Source: Perkinsela sp. CCAP 1560/9
Taxonomy: Eukaryota > Protista > Euglenozoa: Kinetoplastea
Reading direction: 5' to 3'
Length of the DNA stretch: 64,000 bases
NCBI GenBank assembly: GCA_965644495.1
Contig: CBFFSA010000001.1
Location: forward strand, 2,046,001-2,110,000
Under the pieces are notes generated by a model, which saw nothing but the letters and a program-made list of their open reading frames with translations, did no database searches and had not been told where the DNA came from. Made by a program: the position numbers and the translations under genes. Shown here in pieces: positions 6,944 to 43,468 of the stretch. Numbering within the stretch: the first letter of the stretch is position 1; each line of letters opens with the position of its first letter.

Positions 6944-7768
6944 ATGTTAAGCGCAGTCGCACCGGATATTGCACCGACACGGCGTGGTCGTGTACGTGCA
7001 GTTACACTGACGCCTGAAGCGGAATTAACTCGTTTCATTAAAAACATTTCAACAATTGATCCCGAGTGGAAATGGAATTCATTTACTCCCATTGAATCTT
7101 GGAAAGGTGTGACACACAACGGGAGTTGTATTTCCTGGGCAAAAATGTCTCTGCGCGGCACTCTTCAATGGTCATTTTTCCCGCAGATTGTGGAAAAGTG
7201 TGAGGTACTTCTGAATTTTCTAGAAGGACAAATCGATATCACTGAACTAAATTCGGTTATTACGGTATTGAATCTGGGTCAAAATTGCTTTTCTGGTCCC
7301 GTAGATCTTACCCAATTGCCCCTATCACTTGGAAGACTCTGGCTCACAGAAAATTTTCTTTCTGGGAAAGTCGATTTGACTGCTTTAGCCCCGCAGCTAC
7401 AGCGCTTGAGTTTGTCTACAAATAAACTGGAGGGGGAAATCAGTCTCGCCGAGCTTCCAAGTAGCTTACTTTCCCTTCGACTTGATAAAAACATGTTTAC
7501 AGGTAGGTTGGACTTAGCCCATCTACCACTGTTTTTGAATTCTCTAGACGTTTCTGAAAATCAATTCGATGGAGAAATATCTTTGGATTTTCTGCCTCCT
7601 GGGCTGCGTCTATTGGATTTGAGGTCCAACAGTCTTTCAGGAATAGTAGATGTTACCTCACTGACAAACAAGAGTGGCTACCAGGGGCAACGCATTGATT
7701 TACGGGACAATAATTTTTCTGATATTCTACCTTCCAAAGAGTATTTACCACGTTCCATAAAAATATAG
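6944..7768 (+). CDS. leucine-rich repeat protein
   Basis: LxxLxLxxNxFxGxxDLxxLP repeats after a WKGV cap. Confidence 0.9.
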   Translation: MLSAVAPDIAPTRRGRVRAVTLTPEAELTRFIKNISTIDPEWKWNSFTPIESWKGVTHNGSCISWAKMSLRGTLQWSFFPQIVEKCEVLLNFLEGQIDITELNSVITVLNLGQNCFSGPVDLTQLPLSLGRLWLTENFLSGKVDLTALAPQLQRLSLSTNKLEGEISLAELPSSLLSLRLDKNMFTGRLDLAHLPLFLNSLDVSENQFDGEISLDFLPPGLRLLDLRSNSLSGIVDVTSLTNKSGYQGQRIDLRDNNFSDILPSKEYLPRSIKI

Positions 7769-26609: not shown

Positions 26610-26926
26610 AAGTTACTTGTGTATTAGTGTCACAATAGCGTTTTTCAGTGGAATGAACTGTCTTGGATTGTGTTTTTGCTAGCTTTCATTCTTAACTCTG
26701 GAGGCATTAAGTAAACATAAGAATTGATAGAAAATTGCTATTCCATCAACGCTAAACTTATTTCTAATTTATCACCAGAAATGTTCAACATTTATTTAAA
26801 TCTCGACCAACGAACAAAGAAATGCTTGGGAGTCATGGGGGGTGGCATCCCATGAGCATGGCCGACTTAGCTGGGATTCTACTACAGTATATTTTAGCAT
26901 TGTTTTCTTGTGCCGTTATTTTTAAA

Positions 26927-27391
26927 ATGTCTTCTTTTACATTTAGTCCGCAACTAACACTGCGATCATTCAGCCGGCGCGTGTCGGCACAACGTCTTGC
27001 TGCAGAGGACGCTCCACCGATTGTTCGCCCTGGCAAAGTACGAGCGAACTTGCCCCAAGAGTACGATCTTTCCAGATTTGTTGAGCTCATTTCTAGTCCA
27101 CATTCTTCTTGGAACGTTTCTTTGCCAGCGTGTGATTGGTATGGTGTTATTTGTGACAAGGCACGATACGTTACGGAGATGCAGTGGCGTAATTACAAAC
27201 TTCTGGGATCACTCCGTTGGGATTTTTTACCCAGAACGGTACTACATTTCAATGTGTGGGATAACAAGCTCAAAGGGACAATTCCATTCGACGCGATGCC
27301 ACCACACCTTCGTAGTCTTCGTGTACAGTGTAACCTTTTTACAGGCCAGCCGGATTTAAGTCATTTGCTACGCAAATTGATCATACTTGAT
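26927..27391 (+). pseudogene. LRR gene, 5' half (interrupted by retrotransposon)
   Basis: CDWYGVIC cap plus LRRs that end mid-repeat at SHLLRKLIILD. Confidence 0.85.
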
Positions 27392-27417
27392 AAAGATACA
27401 GTTTCTGTACCTTGTTG
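27389..27417 (+). other. genomic copy of the kinetoplastid spliced-leader exon (nt ~11-39) at the retrotransposon 5' junction
   Basis: GATAAAGATACAGTTTCTGTACCTTGTTG versus the euglenozoan SL 3' consensus ...ACAGTTTCTGTACTwTATTG; not followed by the GT of the SL intron. Confidence 0.85.
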
Positions 27418-30400
27418 ATTTGTACTAACTGTTATCCTCCCCTACTGGGGCATGGCACTTCCCCCCTCCACCTCTGCCCCCCAAGCGCAAAGCGACGTCC
27501 CTCGAGGATCTGCTGGCGCAAAATCATCGCGTAAGCACAGCTTCCACTTCACTCAGCAGCGCGCAATACCGATTAAAATCAGACACTCGACTTCCTCGCT
27601 TTGGATATACTTCTCCGATATTCACGCGGCGGCCTCCTTCCTTACTGAAAAGAAACACTTTAATACAGAAATCACAGCGGAGCTTTCCTTGGCACGCACT
27701 TTGGATACTGGAGCGAAGAGAACCGATGGTATTCTAATCGAGAAATGTACCTTACAAGAAGTGATGGACGAAGAAGCTTGTGAACACTTTGTGTTCAAAG
27801 AAACTGCGCCGCCCCACCGCATTTTTCGACACGCCAGCTGGACCGCGGCGCACGCAGACGAAGTCCTGAATCTCAGCCAACAATACTCTTGCCCTGGCAC
27901 ACTCGGTAGGGCGATTAAGAAGAAACTGGCTGGTCACGATATCCCAGGATTGGCATCCTTCGACATAACCCACGTATCGCAGAGGGAACAGACGTCCGAC
28001 GAAATCCCTTGGGAAAATCCCAAGATCTCGTATGATGAGCCACTCGCAATTCGCGCGCCGAGGCAACCGAATGATTCTCGAGGAACACGGTCGTTACGTA
28101 CGCAGCCGTGCGCGCACCGATGCCTAAACAAACTAACATGTCTCCATCCATGCTGTAAAGTGGGCATTGAATCCGAACCCATTCCCGACCCTGCCTCCGA
28201 TCCGAACGCGCTCCAGCTCGGTGAAGCAGGTTCCATGGTTGACGCTTCGCCACATTCAACAGCGTCCAGACGACCTGAGTCCACGCGTTCGCAGCCGTGC
28301 GCACACCGATGCCTAAGCAAACGAACATGTCTACATCCGTGCTGTAAAGTGGGCATTGAACCCGAGCCTATTACCGACCCTGCCTCCGATCTGAATGCTC
28401 GTCAGCTCGTTGAAGCGGCTCCTACTGCTCTAGTAGCAGTGCAGCAAACAGCCTCCAGACCTGGGTATACGCTCTCACAGCCCTGCGCGTATCGATGTCT
28501 AAACAAACTAACATGCCTTCACCCATGTTGCAAAATAGGCGGTGAATGTGATCCGGCCTCTCAAGCAGGCACGCACCGACCCACGGGAACGATTCAGAGT
28601 CCCCACACCGACTCGACACAACTACGAGATGAGCCACACCAGACTATGTACAGCACAACAAGGCGGCCATGCAAGCATGTCTGTCGGGACAAACAGAATT
28701 GCAAACATGGATGTTGCAAAGTTGGCGTGCTGGTCGATAGTTCTACACCCACCGACCCCAGTAGACCTGGAATTCCACATAATGAAACCTATGTTGCCTC
28801 CACTCGTGATCTGCACGCGCAGCACATACAGCCAACATCTGCAAGGAAAATTTCTGACACATCTACGGTACCGGAGGGGGAAGAATCCTCGCACAGACCC
28901 TGCAAACACCTGTGCCACAACAAGGAAGAATGTAAGCACAAGTGTTGTAAGGAAGGTGTCCAAAGCCCAGTTAAAGATACCCGATCGGGCTCGAGTCGCT
29001 GGAGCCTGCGCAATCTTCTTTCATGGGGCTTCACCACAGGGAGCACGCGTACCAACGAAAACACAGCCCCTGCACGCACAAGGGATGGCCATGCAACCGG
29101 ATCCGCAGCGCAACGTTACCCCGAGACGCACAGGAACATGCCACAGGACCAACAGCAAGCCGAAACGACCGCACATCACACACAGGCCCGAATAGATGTG
29201 ATTGAAGAAACCGAGACACAGGTGCAGGATACAACACAGCAGGATTTACCACATCATGACACGCAACCAAATAGTATACCGAATGTACGCACGATTCTGC
29301 AATCACAACGGATGAGAACGCGCAACGATCGTTCAGGAAGCCCAGAAACTGCGGAAGACTTGCTGAGTACCTTGCGTACGATTGAAGGAGGGCGAGTAAT
29401 GGCTAGTCTTTCTCATGAGCAATGGCAACGCGCAATCAAGAAGTCGTTCGAACGATGTGAGAAATACCTTAAACCAGCTGCAACCCCAACTGAAGTACTG
29501 CGACATGCCGATTTGTTAACTGCCTGCATAGCAGTCTCGGCTTATGAAATCGCGCGGGAGGCTGACCCAACGAAAGGATTCAAGCTACGCTCGACGACTG
29601 GCCACACCAAACGTGCTTCACGACCTCTCAGCTACGATCGCTCAGCAAAGGAACTTTCTGGACATATCCGCCAATTAAAACGTACCCTCTCTTACACACA
29701 CGGCCGCTCGGAAAGAGATCGCCTGATACGCAACATAAAAGAAGCCACGAAAGCCCGCAACCTCTACACAGAAGAAGCAAATCTCCTGCGACGTGAAAGG
29801 GAGAAAAGATGGGTGACGGACAGATTTCAACGGAACCCCTGGACGGCAGGAGGGGAATGCCTCGACAATAACGAGAAGATGCGAAAACAGCCAACGATTT
29901 TCCCGAATTGTCCACAGGCAGTTATTGAAACGTTCTTCAAGGACACACTAAGCATTGGCAACGAAACCCACACTCTACCCCCCACTGATCTTCTTGGCGC
30001 TGGAAACGAAAGCGAAATGAAGTGGGAAGATATTGACGTGCAAACCATAGCCGCGGCTATCTCCTCCAAGCGACCGTCCGCTGCACCAGGTCCTGACACC
30101 ATAAGTAACGCCTTCCTCCGACGCTGCACTGAGCTGTACCCCTTCATCGCCCAAGTATTCAACGACCTACTCAAACACCCCGTAGGTCCAACCCACTGGA
30201 AACAAGCGGTGACTCGACTCATCCACAAAGGGGGGGCTACGGATAAACTGTCGAACTGGCGCCCTATCAGCCTGACCAGCTGTCTGGGGAAGCTACTCCA
30301 CTCAATCATAGGACACAAACTTCTGAGTCACGCTGTCAGCACAGGGATCATCGACACGACCATACAAAAAGGCTTTCTCCCCAATGTCAATGGAACCATC

Positions 30401-32404
30401 GAACACACGCAAGCGCTTTGTGAACTGCTGGATTTTCAGAGGCAGCACAAACGGCAATACTGCTTGGGTCAATTCGACCTGAAAAACGCCTTTGGTTCTC
30501 TTCCACACTCGATCCTCTTCCAAGTATTACAATGGGCAAAGGTGTCGCCGATTATCATCGAATATGTTCACTCCCTCTATACCAGTGCTTCTCTCCGAGT
30601 CAAGTGTGCTGAGGGGTTGACTAACCACATTCCCGTTGAACGAGGCGTTCTTCAAGGCGACACCCTATCTCCTGTGCTATTCAACCTTGCGATGGAGGTA
30701 GTTTTAAGGTACCTTCGATCCAGCTTTCCAGGATATGGCATCACATGGGGCGGGCAAGAATCATTCCTTAAGGCGTTTGCGGACGACCTTGCCGTCATTA
30801 CCAAATCACCCGAAGAAATGCAGCATGTTACTAACGCCCTGGTAAAGGTGCTCGCCAGATTAGGCATGCGGCTAAATGTACAGAAATGTCGGCTTCAGTA
30901 TATGGCTGTAGCGGATGGAGGATACAAAACCCACAGACCGCGCATCCGTGCCGGCGGCGAAAGCATACCCCACGTTTGCGACAAAGGCAGTCAGTTTCTG
31001 GGCATGACGCTAGCGCCTGGAGCCCAACAAGGGAAAGTGTTGTTCAAGAGTCTCCGTACACAACTACGCCACTGGCTTACCAACGTATCTGAAAGTGCCA
31101 TGGATACGCCCGCCCGCCTCTGGGTCTACAATAACGTCATTATTTCCCGTCTACGCTACGTTCTGACGGTAAATCCGGGAATCACACTGAATTTCATCCT
31201 GCGGCTGCAAAAGCTTGCGACTACACACATTCGGAAATGGGTGAATATGGCCAAAACTGCAACCAGCGAACTTCTCTATTCTGAGCGGGGGTGGGCCTTA
31301 ACTAGTTTCTCAAAGCTGTGGATACTCTGCACGAGTACACTGGTCGAGCAAATGCAGAAATCACGTGACCCGGCTGTGCAACAGGCTTTAAGACACCGCA
31401 TCCGCAGGGAACTGCACAAGCGCTCAACGGGACACGTCCAACCAGTAGTTGAACTGTACGACCGACGAGAAGACCGTGTGGCGACACGGCGGTTCATTGA
31501 GAGTGAATACGAGCGACACCTTTCCGAATCCGTGCAACGACGGGCTCCCATAGCGGCACAGTGGTTCCGTATGGCCACTGAGGACGAACTTGCGAAAGAC
31601 TTTGCTGCTGCGGTATGTAACATCAACAGTGAGGCACTCTCCCGGTTTACTGCATCTGTGTTGACCCAAACACCACTACCTACTCGTTCAGCACTGCGTC
31701 GTTGGGGTCTAAGTACGCACACGGACACAAAGTGTCCCATTTGCAAAGAGGAGGTGCAGACAGTTCGACATGTCCTCACAGGGTGCAAGGTGGCCCTTGA
31801 ACAGGGCCGCTACACGTTCCGCCATGATCTTATACTCCACGCTATCGCAGATGCCGTAAGAGCATCCCCAGAAACAGCGCAGTACCACTTTGATCTTTCT
31901 CTTTACCGAAACCCCCCAACATGGCTAAGTCAACAGGACACGGCCCTTAGACCTGATGGGTGGATCAAGCTACATAATGGTACTGAGTTCATACTTGAGC
32001 TCACTTCTCCGTGGGAGGAAAACTTTTTATCCTCACATGAGCGGAAAGTGCGGAAGTACGGGAATCTGTTTCTCGAAAGGAAAATGACTAACCCGGCAAC
32101 CTTTCTTCTTGTCATCGAAGTGGGGGCCAGAGGGAAGCTCAACTCCTCTACGCGAGCGCTCAACTCACTTTTCGGAGGTAACAAGGCCACCGCCTCGCAA
32201 TGTCGACAGAAGCTTGTCAAAAGAGCAATACGAGGAAGTTTCGCGATTTTTCAAAACCGCGATAACCCGAGCTGGACGGAAGCCAGCATATAGCGATGAT
32301 GAAAAGCTTAAGGGAAACCCGTTTTGTGCGGGGTTTATGCATGATCTACGTGTATTTCTCTTAGGTGACAATCTCTGCAGTCATACTGCATGATAAACAA
32401 AATA
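27390..32404 (+). mobile_element. full-length RLE-type non-LTR retrotransposon (HERO-like)
   Basis: Single intact ORF with RT and C-terminal CCHC+RLE; short 3' UTR with stem-loop and A-rich end; excision restores the LRR reading frame. Confidence 0.93.
27452..32293 (+). CDS. retrotransposon polyprotein: 5x CxHxCxxKxxCxHxCCK modules + reverse transcriptase + zinc knuckle + restriction-like endonuclease
   Basis: APGPD, WRPISL, IDTTIQKGF, FDLKNAFGSLPH, GVLQGDTLSP, AFADD; CPIC...HVLTGC, GRYTFRHD, LRPDG, LELTSPWEE, ERK.RKY, EVGARG. Confidence 0.95.
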   Translation: MALPPSTSAPQAQSDVPRGSAGAKSSRKHSFHFTQQRAIPIKIRHSTSSLWIYFSDIHAAASFLTEKKHFNTEITAELSLARTLDTGAKRTDGILIEKCTLQEVMDEEACEHFVFKETAPPHRIFRHASWTAAHADEVLNLSQQYSCPGTLGRAIKKKLAGHDIPGLASFDITHVSQREQTSDEIPWENPKISYDEPLAIRAPRQPNDSRGTRSLRTQPCAHRCLNKLTCLHPCCKVGIESEPIPDPASDPNALQLGEAGSMVDASPHSTASRRPESTRSQPCAHRCLSKRTCLHPCCKVGIEPEPITDPASDLNARQLVEAAPTALVAVQQTASRPGYTLSQPCAYRCLNKLTCLHPCCKIGGECDPASQAGTHRPTGTIQSPHTDSTQLRDEPHQTMYSTTRRPCKHVCRDKQNCKHGCCKVGVLVDSSTPTDPSRPGIPHNETYVASTRDLHAQHIQPTSARKISDTSTVPEGEESSHRPCKHLCHNKEECKHKCCKEGVQSPVKDTRSGSSRWSLRNLLSWGFTTGSTRTNENTAPARTRDGHATGSAAQRYPETHRNMPQDQQQAETTAHHTQARIDVIEETETQVQDTTQQDLPHHDTQPNSIPNVRTILQSQRMRTRNDRSGSPETAEDLLSTLRTIEGGRVMASLSHEQWQRAIKKSFERCEKYLKPAATPTEVLRHADLLTACIAVSAYEIAREADPTKGFKLRSTTGHTKRASRPLSYDRSAKELSGHIRQLKRTLSYTHGRSERDRLIRNIKEATKARNLYTEEANLLRREREKRWVTDRFQRNPWTAGGECLDNNEKMRKQPTIFPNCPQAVIETFFKDTLSIGNETHTLPPTDLLGAGNESEMKWEDIDVQTIAAAISSKRPSAAPGPDTISNAFLRRCTELYPFIAQVFNDLLKHPVGPTHWKQAVTRLIHKGGATDKLSNWRPISLTSCLGKLLHSIIGHKLLSHAVSTGIIDTTIQKGFLPNVNGTIEHTQALCELLDFQRQHKRQYCLGQFDLKNAFGSLPHSILFQVLQWAKVSPIIIEYVHSLYTSASLRVKCAEGLTNHIPVERGVLQGDTLSPVLFNLAMEVVLRYLRSSFPGYGITWGGQESFLKAFADDLAVITKSPEEMQHVTNALVKVLARLGMRLNVQKCRLQYMAVADGGYKTHRPRIRAGGESIPHVCDKGSQFLGMTLAPGAQQGKVLFKSLRTQLRHWLTNVSESAMDTPARLWVYNNVIISRLRYVLTVNPGITLNFILRLQKLATTHIRKWVNMAKTATSELLYSERGWALTSFSKLWILCTSTLVEQMQKSRDPAVQQALRHRIRRELHKRSTGHVQPVVELYDRREDRVATRRFIESEYERHLSESVQRRAPIAAQWFRMATEDELAKDFAAAVCNINSEALSRFTASVLTQTPLPTRSALRRWGLSTHTDTKCPICKEEVQTVRHVLTGCKVALEQGRYTFRHDLILHAIADAVRASPETAQYHFDLSLYRNPPTWLSQQDTALRPDGWIKLHNGTEFILELTSPWEENFLSSHERKVRKYGNLFLERKMTNPATFLLVIEVGARGKLNSSTRALNSLFGGNKATASQCRQKLVKRAIRGSFAIFQNRDNPSWTEASI

Positions 32405-32788
32405 CTACATACCAACCGATTTGATGGTACTGTAAATATTTCTCATCTGCCACCTAACTTGCGGGATTTAGACATTCATGGCAATAATTTTTCTGGTAAG
32501 CTCGACATCACACGGTTGCCACGAAAGATGACTTACGTAAATTTCTCGCACAATCGATTCACAGGCCCGCTTCACCTACATCAACTGCCCACATCACTTT
32601 TAGTGCTTGACGCAAAAAATAATCTATTCTCTGGGTTAGTGAAGTTTGACGGTCTTCCTGTTTCATTGCGCTCGTTAAGCCTAGAAAACAATAAGAAGCT
32701 TTCCGGTGAATTTAACAAGTCTGATCTTTCGGAGGATTATAATTTTATTAGTGTAGGTGGTACTGGGATTATAGAATTGGGTCGCTAA
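32405..32788 (+). pseudogene. LRR gene, 3' half
   Basis: Resumes mid-repeat at LHTNRFDG in the same frame as the 5' half; four further LRRs. Confidence 0.85.
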
Positions 32789-42334: not shown

Positions 42335-43468
42335 TTGATCATACCAACATCATTTTCATCTTTCCCATATAAAGACCTAACGCGCCGAGGGAAAATAAGG
42401 AATGGGGAAGAATTCGAAGAAAGAATAATGTCTGTTGTAATAAAATCTGCACATGCTTTTCACAAGCACTATCACATCTTACTGTTTTTATTACTTTTCT
42501 ATGCAACGGAATTTCGAATGATAGTCTGCAATAAAGCGAAGGATGTTCCTCAGAGACGCACGGGTAAACTACGCGCTGCCATGTTAGCTCCAGATATTCA
42601 GTTTCGTCGATTTGTGGAAACCTTGCAGAAACGCCCACGCAATTGGAGAGAGAGAACGCCGGTGTGTCAATGGCGTGGTGTGATCTGCGGATCACAAGAA
42701 GAGATCGTTCTGCTACAGGGCGATAATAAAGGACTCCAAGGGAATCTCTCCTGGGCACATTTTCCTCACACAATGCACAGTCTGATTGTTTCAGAGAACA
42801 TGCTATCGGGGACAGTAGATTTCTCATCAACTCCATTCACAAGGATCCGACGCCCGACGCAAGGAGAGGAGGAGGAAGAGGACTTAAATGCGCCTCTTTT
42901 GCGTCTGTCTTTGGGAAATAATCAGTTTCATTCCATTCTCTTTTCTGACCTTCCTCAACATTTGTTTTTGTTAGATGCGTCTAAAAATAACCTACACGGT
43001 AATCTCACGCTGAACGCTTTGCCCTCTGATCTGAACGGCCTTTTGCTATCAGGCAATAAGTATTCGGGAAGTTTGAATCTGGAACACTTACCACGTTCAC
43101 TGTGTGAGTTAGATGTTTCTTTCAATAAACTTGAAGGGCCTATTTTGCTTAATACATTACCCTCTTCTCTTGAGAGACTCGAACTACAGGGAAACCAGCT
43201 TGGCGGAACTTTGTATTTTACTCTTCTCCCAAACTCCCTTAGTGTTTTGAAGGTTCATCATAATCTTTTTGATGGAGAATTATTCCTTTCAAATCTTCCT
43301 TCTGGAATGCGAAGTCTCAGTTTCTTAGGATTAAATATTTATCGTGTCAGCACTGATGTAATGTTGGAAAGACTTACGGAGAGTACCTACAGAATGCGAA
43401 GAGAAGCTATGTGGCCCCTAAGAATTGAATTCGACATGGGTCATATTCCAGAAATTTCTCTAATGTAA
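42335..43468 (+). CDS. leucine-rich repeat protein (true start probably downstream, at MIVCNK)
   Basis: CQWRGVIC cap plus about nine LRRs. Confidence 0.88.
   Translation: MIIPTSFSSFPYKDLTRRGKIRNGEEFEERIMSVVIKSAHAFHKHYHILLFLLLFYATEFRMIVCNKAKDVPQRRTGKLRAAMLAPDIQFRRFVETLQKRPRNWRERTPVCQWRGVICGSQEEIVLLQGDNKGLQGNLSWAHFPHTMHSLIVSENMLSGTVDFSSTPFTRIRRPTQGEEEEEDLNAPLLRLSLGNNQFHSILFSDLPQHLFLLDASKNNLHGNLTLNALPSDLNGLLLSGNKYSGSLNLEHLPRSLCELDVSFNKLEGPILLNTLPSSLERLELQGNQLGGTLYFTLLPNSLSVLKVHHNLFDGELFLSNLPSGMRSLSFLGLNIYRVSTDVMLERLTESTYRMRREAMWPLRIEFDMGHIPEISLM

What the first reader, a model, noticed from the sequence alone, without database searches (positions are those of the whole stretch)
27389..27451. 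Intact retrotransposon whose 5' end is a DNA copy of the spliced leader: a candidate trans-splicing-processed LINE
Seen: exactly where the host LRR gene breaks, the sequence reads GATAAAGATACAGTTTCTGTACCTTGTTG. Then come 34 nt of UTR and the ATG of an uninterrupted 1613-aa RT/RLE ORF. Known: ACAGTTTCTGTAC...TTG is the conserved 3' part of the 39-nt kinetoplastid SL exon, and in an SL RNA gene it is followed by GT. Here it is followed by ATTTG and there is no SL gene context. Inference: the element RNA was SL trans-spliced out of a polycistronic transcript and then reverse transcribed almost to the cap. The element would thus use host trans-splicing, not an internal promoter or HDV-like ribozyme (as in R2 or ingi/L1Tc), to define and cap its 5' end. 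Alternative: the parent sits in an SL RNA gene like CRE/SLACS/CZAR (which duplicate SL sequence from about nt 11) and carried the flank to an ectopic site. The AGs inside the relic (AAAG, ACAG) could serve as the next splice acceptor, analogous to SL-relic recycling in dinoflagellate retrogenes.
Basis: partly seen in the sequence, partly recalled or inferred. Interest (0 to 1): 0.92.

Follow-up and report, generated by a model that had tools for sequence, protein, structure and literature searches.

The report
Spliced-leader-headed retrotransposon in LRR gene
A 5-kb jumping gene that recently landed in a leucine-rich-repeat gene of this kinetoplastid-type protist begins with a DNA copy of the cell's own mRNA leader, the mark expected if it was copied back from a trans-spliced RNA, which I found no report of for kinetoplastid LINEs.

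Summary
Window 27389-27417 equals nt 10-38 of this organism's own 38-nt spliced leader (SL); the SL RNA gene array lies elsewhere on the contig. An uninterrupted allele in a second public assembly (99% identical flanks) fixes the insertion at 27392-32404: 5013 bp, with no target duplication and no deletion. The first three bases (GAT) are shared by host and SL.

The element is an R2-type LINE with an intact 1613-aa ORF (RT, CCHC, restriction-like endonuclease). All 15 full-length relatives I could read carry the SL, joined exactly at the exon end. Two 5'-truncated copies lack it. One relative, and 11 of 15 stacked heads genome-wide, carry a second SL joined exactly after an AG inside an older relic.

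So a trans-spliced RNA template is the best reading (about 0.72). No RNA data could be obtained.

New here: this family's heads start at SL nt 10-14 in 14 of 15 copies, while other families reach nt 1-7. That is the position where CZAR/SLACS cut SL genes, and it is unexplained. The family also hits one fixed position of LRR genes repeatedly.

The scan has met SL-headed elements elsewhere in this genome.

The parts
26822..27391 (+). 5' part of the host leucine-rich-repeat gene, up to and including GAT
   Evidence: ORF list and Pfam LRRNT_2. Collinear with the uninterrupted 307-aa allele P0144 / L095.
27389..27391 (+). GAT, a 3-nt overlap shared by the host target and SL nt 10-12 (5' junction microhomology)
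   Evidence: The empty allele reads ...CTTGAT|CTACAT.... SL nt 10-12 are GAT.
27392..27417 (+). Unambiguous SL relic, nt 13-38 of the 38-nt spliced-leader exon, ending at the exon's 3' end
   Evidence: Identical to the SL RNA gene exon. Absent from the empty allele.
27392..32404 (+). Whole insertion: 5013-bp non-LTR retrotransposon, with no target duplication or deletion
   Evidence: Alignment of both flanks to the empty allele L095. Ends agree with the 98-99% copies on C1:230300-235320 and C2:1089516.
27418..27421 (+). Short spacer ATTT between the SL and the conserved 5' UTR box. Relatives have either 16-18 nt starting AATTA or 4-7 nt here.
27422..27429 (+). GTACTAAC box, the most conserved part of the 5' UTR (kept as GTACTAC in the 43%-identical sister family)
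   Evidence: Alignment of 12 copies.
27439..27450 (+). 4-bp hairpin CCCC-TACT-GGGG directly before C-ATG. In subfamily D the stem changes to CTC/GAG.
27452..32293 (+). Uninterrupted ORF of 1613 aa
28109..28948 (+). N-terminal repeats of a Cys/His motif. Four match CxHxCx5CxHxCC exactly; a fifth (CAYRC...) differs by one residue. No Pfam match.
30224..31006 (+). Reverse transcriptase domain (FADD at 30776-30787)
   Evidence: Pfam RVT_1, E 4.9e-31. PDB R2 and LINE-1 ORF2 hits.
31733..31786 (+). CCHC zinc knuckle between the RT and the nuclease
   Evidence: Aligned to the R2 CCHC. Invariant C, C, H, C columns in alignment A1. Coordinates.
31949..32059 (+). Restriction-like endonuclease motifs RPD ... 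ILELT ... KVRKY, i.e. PD-(D/E)XK
   Evidence: Aligned to the R2 nuclease in 9nl3.
32376..32390 (+). 3' UTR hairpin TGCAGT-CAT-ACTGCA. It is kept, with changed loop and stem, in all subfamilies and in the short non-coding partner.
32398..32402 (+). Short A-rich tail CAAAA. Relatives have 3-9 A; the tandem copies on C53 have about 25.
32403..32404 (+). TA, two extra bases at the 3' junction that are absent from the empty allele
32405..32788 (+). 3' part of the host LRR gene, resuming with CTACAT and running through the stop codon

Best explanation
The 29-mer is the head of a recent, polymorphic 5013-bp insertion of an R2-type (RT, CCHC, restriction-like endonuclease) non-LTR retrotransposon.

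Shown:
- The head is a DNA copy of the organism's own SL exon, unambiguously nt 13-38, with nt 10-12 shared with the target.
- It is joined to the element's 5' UTR exactly where the SL exon ends.
- The insertion sits at position 13 of a 23-residue LRR unit, with blunt ends: no duplication, no deletion, and 2 filler bases at the 3' junction.

Inferred:
- The element was transcribed inside a polycistron.
- Host trans-splicing gave it its capped 5' end.
- Its own protein copied that RNA by target-primed reverse transcription, starting at the 3' hairpin and short A tail.
- In this family the copy that ends up in DNA stops about 10 nt short of the cap.
- The 5' junction was closed on a 3-nt microhomology.

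SL-headed copies can themselves be sources. When re-transcribed, they can be trans-spliced at the AGs inside the relic, which gives stacked heads.
For: 1. SL identity. A tandem SL RNA gene has the exon followed by GT. The SL core occurs 533 times in 21 Mb, against 5 for the control pattern.

2. Empty allele. P0144 / L095 has the same synteny and 99% identical flanks. It lacks 27392-32404 and reads GAT|CTACAT.

3. Exon-end junction. All nine GTACTAAC-type copies in G000 have it. So do the subfamily D and E copies.

4. Head conservation. The head is identical to the host SL in lineages of 68%, 62% and 43% protein identity, while the adjacent spacer has diverged.

5. Stacked relic. Related copy L098 reads SL nt 11-38, then SL nt 23-38, then the UTR, so the new SL is joined right after the relic's ACAG. 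Genome-wide, of 15 stacked heads, 9 are joined after ACAG and 2 after AAAG.

6. Truncated copies. Two independent 5'-truncated copies have no SL.

7. Partner element. One copy of the short non-coding partner, which shares the 3' hairpin module, carries SL nt 3-38 (L092). Its template RNA therefore held nearly the whole SL.

8. Orientation. All 22 ORFs of at least 250 aa that look like genes in the window lie on the + strand, as does the element.

9. Domains. RT, CCHC and RLE are all present.
Against: - There is no RNA evidence.
- No source copy with an AG at the usual junction (before AATTA...) was found.
- The retrocopies have TTG at that point. The 16-18-nt spacer holds no AG, so the five short-spacer forms, this copy included, are not explained by alternative acceptors.
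- Only 1 of 15 family copies is stacked.
- The family-specific head start at nt 10-14 is not predicted by trans-splicing, and it coincides with the CZAR/SLACS site.
Confidence: 0.72

Rival explanations
1. Inherited head of CRE/SLACS/CZAR type. An ancestor lived in SL RNA genes, cut between the equivalents of nt 11 and 12, and carried SL nt 11-38 as a fixed part of its RNA. The RNA's 5' end would be made at nt 10|11 by processing or by an internal start. Ectopic copies such as this one simply bring that segment along, with no new trans-splicing.
For: - Heads start at nt 10-14 in 14 of 15 family copies, against nt 1-7 in 32 of 39 copies of other families (Fisher p 2e-6).
- CZAR and SLACS insert between nt 11 and 12 of the 39-nt mini-exon (PMC5814959). 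Counted from the conserved core, that is this SL's nt 10|11.
- One copy abuts the SL head of a neighbouring element at about that position (L071).
- No AG-bearing source copy was found.
- Single extra bases just before the head look like run-off at a real RNA end.
Against: - No copy lies in an SL RNA gene.
- No intron bases follow the SL.
- There is no target duplication at the one site with an empty allele.
- L098 shows a freshly added second SL in the same superfamily, and that new head also starts at nt 11. The limit is therefore imposed at copying, not inherited.
- A partner copy carries SL nt 3-38.
- The head has stayed identical to the host SL across deep divergence.
- Rfam finds no ribozyme in 27200-27800.
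Confidence: 0.15
2. Template switching. The reverse transcriptase reached the 5' end of an unspliced element RNA, added a few bases, and jumped onto an SL-bearing RNA, as in U6/L1 chimeric retrocopies. The SL was therefore never part of the element's RNA.
For: - The spacers between the SL and GTACTAAC vary and are T-rich (4, 4, 4, 6, 7, 10, 15, 16-18 nt).
- Stuttered partial heads lie upstream of some copies (L033, L099, L003).
- Unspliced SL RNA has itself been retro-copied at several loci.
- R2-type enzymes are known to jump between templates (established knowledge).
Against: - The junction is always the exon's 3' end. Only a transient splicing intermediate offers that as a free RNA end.
- Retro-copied SL RNA keeps its intron part, whereas the element heads never do.
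- The long spacer is homologous across four subfamilies, so it is templated.
- 5'-truncated copies carry no SL.
- Stacked heads are joined after AG in 11 of 15 cases, which is a splicing signature.
Confidence: 0.08
3. Not part of the insertion: host LRR sequence, a chance match or an assembly artefact.
For: The first three bases (GAT) are host sequence.
Against: - The remaining 26 nt are absent from the uninterrupted allele and from LRR paralogues.
- The chance expectation is 0.01.
- A related copy with the same flank is present in two independent assemblies (L037 and L093).
Confidence: 0.01

Closest known systems
CRE clade: SLACS (T. brucei), CZAR (T. cruzi), CRE1/CRE2 (Crithidia)
   Same: These are kinetoplastid non-LTR retrotransposons with an RT followed by a restriction-like endonuclease and an A-rich 3' end (PMC12278014). 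They are bound up with the spliced leader. Their cut between nt 11 and 12 of the mini-exon (PMC5814959) matches the position where this family's SL heads begin.
   Different: CRE elements sit inside SL RNA genes and make target duplications (PMC3636483). This copy sits in an LRR gene with no duplication. None of the copies read is in an SL RNA gene, and the SL stops exactly at the exon end. The N-terminal Cys/His repeats differ from what I recall of CRE. RT-tree membership was not tested, because no CRE reference sequence could be obtained.
Dinoflagellate retrogenes with DinoSL relics
   Same: These are DNA copies of trans-spliced RNAs marked by the SL at their 5' end. They show stacked relics where a new SL was spliced to an AG inside the old one (PMC6050394, PMC5585692).
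   Different: Those are host genes copied in trans, and the DinoSL ends in AG, which makes recycling easy. Here the marked RNA is the retrotransposon's own. The SL ends in TTG, stacking is rare, and the heads are cut short at nt 10-14.
R2 elements of animals
   Same: They share the domain order (RT, CCHC, PD-(D/E)XK nuclease; PDB 9nl3, 9dou, 8gh6), a 3' RNA structure used for priming, a short tail, and blunt or near-blunt insertion into multicopy targets.
   Different: R2 is co-transcribed with 28S rRNA and freed by an HDV-like ribozyme. Here no ribozyme was detected, and the 5' end carries the SL. The targets are LRR genes or (TG)n repeats.
ingi / L1Tc with the Pr77 signature
   Same: These are LINEs of kinetoplastids that must solve the problem of defining a 5' end inside polycistronic transcription.
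   Different: Pr77 acts as an internal promoter and gives unspliced transcripts (PMC8190864), and these elements carry an APE-type nuclease. There is no Pr77 here; the 5' end is an SL.
NeSL-1 of nematodes
   Same: It is an RLE LINE tied to spliced-leader sequences (PMC4640811).
   Different: NeSL-1 inserts into SL1 genes and carries a protease domain. It is not reported to carry the SL as a product of splicing.

Membership tests
RLE-type (R2-superfamily) non-LTR retrotransposon | Single ORF with an RT domain | tested here: met
   Pfam RVT_1 at aa 925-1185, E 4.9e-31. PDB R2 hits at E 3e-31.
RLE-type (R2-superfamily) non-LTR retrotransposon | CCHC motif and PD-(D/E)XK nuclease C-terminal to the RT, and no APE domain | tested here: met
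   CPIC...H...C at aa 1428-1445. RPD, ILELT and KVRKY align to the R2 nuclease. Pfam finds no Exo_endo_phos domain.
RLE-type (R2-superfamily) non-LTR retrotransposon | Insertion by target-primed reverse transcription, with a defined 3' end and variable 5' ends | tested here: met
   A common 3' hairpin and tail in all copies, 5'-truncated copies, and an empty site with filler bases and microhomology.
CRE clade (SLACS/CZAR/CRE) | Insertion in SL RNA genes between nt 11 and 12 | tested here: not met
   This copy lies in an LRR gene. None of the 15 copies read is followed or preceded by SL RNA gene sequence. The SL array is collapsed in the assembly, so insertions there cannot be excluded.
CRE clade (SLACS/CZAR/CRE) | Target-site duplication | tested here: not met
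   The empty allele shows neither duplication nor deletion.
CRE clade (SLACS/CZAR/CRE) | RT phylogeny grouping with SLACS/CZAR/CRE | not tested
   Two protein searches returned no named CRE sequence. The closest named relative is a Papus ankaliazontas (PhF-6) transcript at 49% identity.
SL-relic retrocopies (dinoflagellate type) | SL at the 5' end of the DNA copy, joined at the exon's 3' end | tested here: met
SL-relic retrocopies (dinoflagellate type) | Stacked relics, with the older one cut at an internal AG | tested here: met
   Not seen in this copy. Seen in related copy L098, and in 11 of 15 stacked heads genome-wide.
SL-relic retrocopies (dinoflagellate type) | Transcripts of the element actually carry the SL | not testable with these tools

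The most novel reading that the evidence does not exclude
The family-specific head limit at SL nt 10-13 may be the footprint of an SL-directed step of the element's own protein: a cut or a stop at the same place where CZAR/SLACS cut SL genes. If so, SL-gene-specific CRE elements and these dispersed SL-headed elements are two faces of one mechanism. An SL carried on the element RNA, gained by trans-splicing, would guide or mark 5' integration. The 'target duplications' of SL sequence beside CRE-type elements would then be RNA-borne SL heads rather than staggered-cut duplications.
Probability: 0.15. Interest if true: 0.9.

Novelty: new variant of a known kind. Interest (0 to 1): 0.8.

Why it matters
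Retrotransposons in organisms with polycistronic transcription need a way to make a capped, defined 5' end. The known solutions are an internal promoter (Pr77 in ingi/L1Tc), a ribozyme (R2), or the promoter of the SL RNA gene the element sits in (SLACS).

This element points to a fourth solution: letting the host's trans-splicing machinery supply the cap and the 5' end. The SL then remains in the DNA copy as a permanent tag.

- The tag gives a built-in marker of retrotransposition for dating and tracing copies, as DinoSL relics do in dinoflagellates.
- The polymorphic insertion with an intact ORF indicates that the family has been active recently.
- The nt 10-14 limit and its match to the CZAR/SLACS cut site make the origin of SL-gene specificity in the CRE clade testable.
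- The repeated hits at one position of a gene family with more than 150 members show a new multicopy target for an RLE LINE.

Tried and rejected
- More genomic loci. I did not try to pull flanks by other routes. Later whole-genome calls were pattern counts only.
- Ribozyme at the head. Rfam at E up to 10 found nothing in 27200-27800. By eye, only 4 bp could form a P1-like stem.
- Clade placement. The listing of cluster members and the protein-atlas search gave no names. Neither protein search returned a named CRE, NeSL or HERO sequence.
- Old SLACS and CZAR papers are not held. The 49-bp and 29-bp duplication sizes I recall for SLACS and CRE1 are therefore from memory only and are not used as evidence.
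- My first reconstruction of the empty site from LRR periodicity (ATA as host) was wrong. The real allele shows GAT|CTA, and TA is filler.
- SL-like target site. Only 3-4 of 10 flanks resemble SL nt 11-19, and the (TG)n-specific sister family has the same head limit. Microhomology with the target therefore does not explain the limit.
- Alternative AG acceptors as the cause of the short spacers. Rejected because the long spacer has no AG.
- A literature search for this SL sequence found no paper.
Full report
**What is there**

It is followed by 34 nt and the ATG (27452) of an uninterrupted 1613-codon ORF ending at 32293. The 20-mer ACAG...TTG occurs once in the window, with 0.01 matches expected by chance.

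The window is G000:C1:2046001-2110000 of a 21-Mb genome. In that genome the SL core CAGTTTCTGTAC occurs 533 times, against 5 for a control pattern.

**The organism's spliced leader**

One locus, C1:661237-661830, is a 297-bp tandem repeat. There a 38-nt exon (AACTTTAACG...CCTTGTTG) is followed by GTATGAG. A 5S rRNA gene lies beside it. About 103 nt of this unit, from nt 3 of the exon to a point followed by a few A, has been retro-copied to at least five other loci.

I take this as the SL RNA gene. That rests on the gene structure and on the conserved kinetoplastid SL core (established knowledge), not on RNA data.

The window 29-mer equals nt 10-38 of this exon. ATTTG follows it, not the intron.

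**The empty allele**

A search with the truncated LRR product found one protein of 307 aa at 98% identity (P0144). Its contig, in a second public assembly (ERZ24900291), has the same neighbours, with the ArsA/GET3 gene upstream. Its flanks are 99.0-99.3% identical to the window.

The two alleles compare as follows:
- The empty allele reads ...CTTGAT|CTACATACC...
- The window reads ...CTTGAT, then AAAG... through ...CAAAA, then TA, then CTACATACC...
- The insertion is therefore 27392-32404 (5013 bp), with no target duplication and no deletion.
- Two filler bases (TA) sit at the 3' junction.
- A 3-nt overlap (GAT) at the 5' junction is shared by the host and SL nt 10-12.

Only its first three bases are host sequence. 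The insertion is polymorphic and so recent. My earlier guess of the empty site from LRR periodicity was wrong in detail and is withdrawn.

**The element**

The ORF has Pfam RVT_1 at aa 925-1185. It aligns with solved R2 proteins (9nl3, 9dou; E about 3e-31) from the RT through a CCHC knuckle (aa 1428-1445) and the nuclease motifs RPD, ILELT and KVRKY. It is an RLE-type, R2-superfamily LINE.

The N-terminal third holds five repeats of a Cys/His motif with no Pfam match.

The 5' UTR consists of:
- the SL;
- a spacer;
- a GTACTAAC box (27422-27429);
- a 4-bp hairpin directly before the ATG. In one subfamily the stem changes from CCCC/GGGG to CTC/GAG.

The 3' UTR ends in a hairpin (32376-32390) and a short A run. 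A short non-coding partner element shares the flanks of this hairpin, with a compensated stem.

**The family**

Nine SL-headed copies with this UTR exist in G000. Further copies of subfamily D, and of a sister family with 43% protein identity that sits in (TG)n repeats, were read from the two assemblies.

Three points hold for all 15 independent full-length copies:
- The SL is joined exactly at its exon end.
- The head is identical to the host SL, apart from single mismatches in two copies, while the adjacent spacer has diverged.
- The head starts at nt 10-14 in 14 copies and at nt 21 in one.

Heads of other SL-headed families in the same loci start at nt 1-7 in 32 of 39 cases, most often at nt 3. 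These often lie right after the poly(A) of a neighbouring unit (Fisher p 2e-6). The partner element's heads start between nt 3 and nt 18, with a mode at 11-13. One of its copies carries nt 3-38 (L092).

Two independent 5'-truncated copies carry no SL.

**Evidence for trans-splicing**

The exon-end junction is what splicing makes. The strongest single item is L098, a subfamily D copy. It reads SL nt 11-38 (one mismatch), then SL nt 23-38, then the usual UTR. The older relic begins exactly after its internal ACAG.

A genome-wide pattern count found 15 stacked heads:
- 9 are joined after ACAG.
- 2 are joined after AAAG.
- 4 are other arrangements.

In L098 the newly gained head again starts at nt 11. 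The family limit is therefore imposed when the RNA is copied or integrated, not inherited.

The element also lies in the sense direction of a transcription unit in which all large gene-like ORFs are on the + strand.

**What does not fit neatly**

- I found no source copy with an AG at the usual junction. Retrocopies have TTG there.
- The spacer between the SL and the box comes in a long form (16-18 nt, starting AATTA, homologous across four subfamilies) and in short forms (4-7 nt). The short forms arose at least five times, this copy included.
- The long spacer has no AG, so the short forms are not alternative acceptor products. They may be skips by the reverse transcriptase across a small AU hairpin, or switches between SL-headed RNAs. 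This is open.
- Only one of the 15 family copies is stacked. A homology-guided switch between the relic and the new SL, which would collapse stacks, is my speculation.

**The head limit and CZAR/SLACS**

CZAR and SLACS insert between nt 11 and 12 of the 39-nt mini-exon (PMC5814959). This SL is one base shorter on the 5' side of the conserved core, so the equivalent point is nt 10|11, where most heads of this family begin.

The limit is not due to microhomology with SL-like targets. The (TG)n-specific sister family shows it too.

Possible causes are:
- a cut of the RNA or of the hybrid by the element's nuclease;
- a stop of its polymerase in front of cap-bound factors;
- an RNA primer remnant of about 10 nt.

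None was testable here. Rfam finds no ribozyme.

**Target choice**

The window copy, copy L063, copy L098 and two partner copies (L007, L028) all sit at position 12-14 of the 23-residue LRR unit. That unit belongs to a gene family with at least 150 members. Other copies sit elsewhere. So there is a marked preference for this LRR position, not strict specificity.

**Comparison and verdict**

The element works like a dinoflagellate SL-tagged retrocopy, but the tagged RNA is the retrotransposon's own. Structurally it is an R2-superfamily LINE.

It fails two tested CRE features, insertion in an SL gene and target duplication. Its RT-tree position could not be tested.

I found no report of SL-headed LINEs in kinetoplastids. 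The scan's own notes record the same phenomenon at other places in this genome. Those notes gave me the leads on the LRR position and on the partner element, both of which I checked here.

Noticed in passing
L005:2218-2336 (G000:C1 near 661 kb): A 5S rRNA gene (99 bits) lies next to the SL RNA gene repeats. This linkage is known from bodonid kinetoplastids. The SL array holds only about 2.5 units in the assembly and is probably collapsed.
   Followed up: partly
L084, L085, L086, L087/L088 (C25, C2:801575, C86, C49, C20:10884): Retro-copied unspliced SL RNA: exon nt 3-5 to 38, plus about 65 nt of intron, then a few A, at dispersed sites. This shows that reverse transcriptases here also copy the SL RNA itself.
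   Followed up: partly
L094:2926-7700 and L099:1431-6300 (ENA ctg3877l, ctg3970l): A sister LINE family (43% protein identity) is inserted in (TG)n microsatellites. It has the same SL head limit (nt 12), a T10-T15 spacer and a GTACTAC box.
   Followed up: partly
window 26822-27391 and 32405-32788; paralogues at window 6944-7768 and 42335-43468: The host gene belongs to a family of at least 150 small LRR proteins of about 280 aa, built of 23-residue units. Position 12-14 of the unit is hit repeatedly by this LINE and by its short partner.
   Followed up: partly
G000:C53:22231-38672 (L064-L067): A tandem repeat of 5370 bp. Each unit ends with the last 331 bp of this element (98% identical) and a poly(A) of about 25. 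An unrelated truncated copy (L075) starts within 5 nt of the same point.
   Followed up: partly
window 28109-28948: Five repeats of a Cys/His motif (CxHxCx5CxHxCC) lie in the N-terminal third of the ORF and have no Pfam match. This may be the DNA- or RNA-binding module. The same motif appears in the flank of copy L034, which suggests a nested insertion.
   Followed up: no
many loci, e.g. L012, L014, L046, L049, L053: Nearly all SL-headed elements of other families continue after the SL with a similar A/T-rich box (AATTATTTYC or ATTTATTTYC). Many stand head to tail, with the poly(A) of one unit touching the SL head of the next.
   Followed up: no
L033:1430-1510, L099:1385-1430, L043:1480-1510, L003:1470-1500: Stuttered partial SL pieces (for example nt 11-18 or nt 12-22, repeated two to three times with single extra bases) lie just upstream of some heads. 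They look like repeated jumps or slippage of the polymerase at the 5' end.
   Followed up: no
P0176 (EukProt PhF_6 transcript): The closest named relative of the RT is a transcript of the free-living prokinetoplastid Papus ankaliazontas strain PhF-6 (49% identity over 37% of the query). This hints at where the organism belongs, and that related elements are expressed there.
   Followed up: no
L042:1470-1520 (G000:C4:859156): One related copy has only TGTTG (at most SL nt 34-38) before its spacer, preceded by a duplicated 17-mer. It is either a strongly truncated head or a different kind of 5' junction.
   Followed up: no
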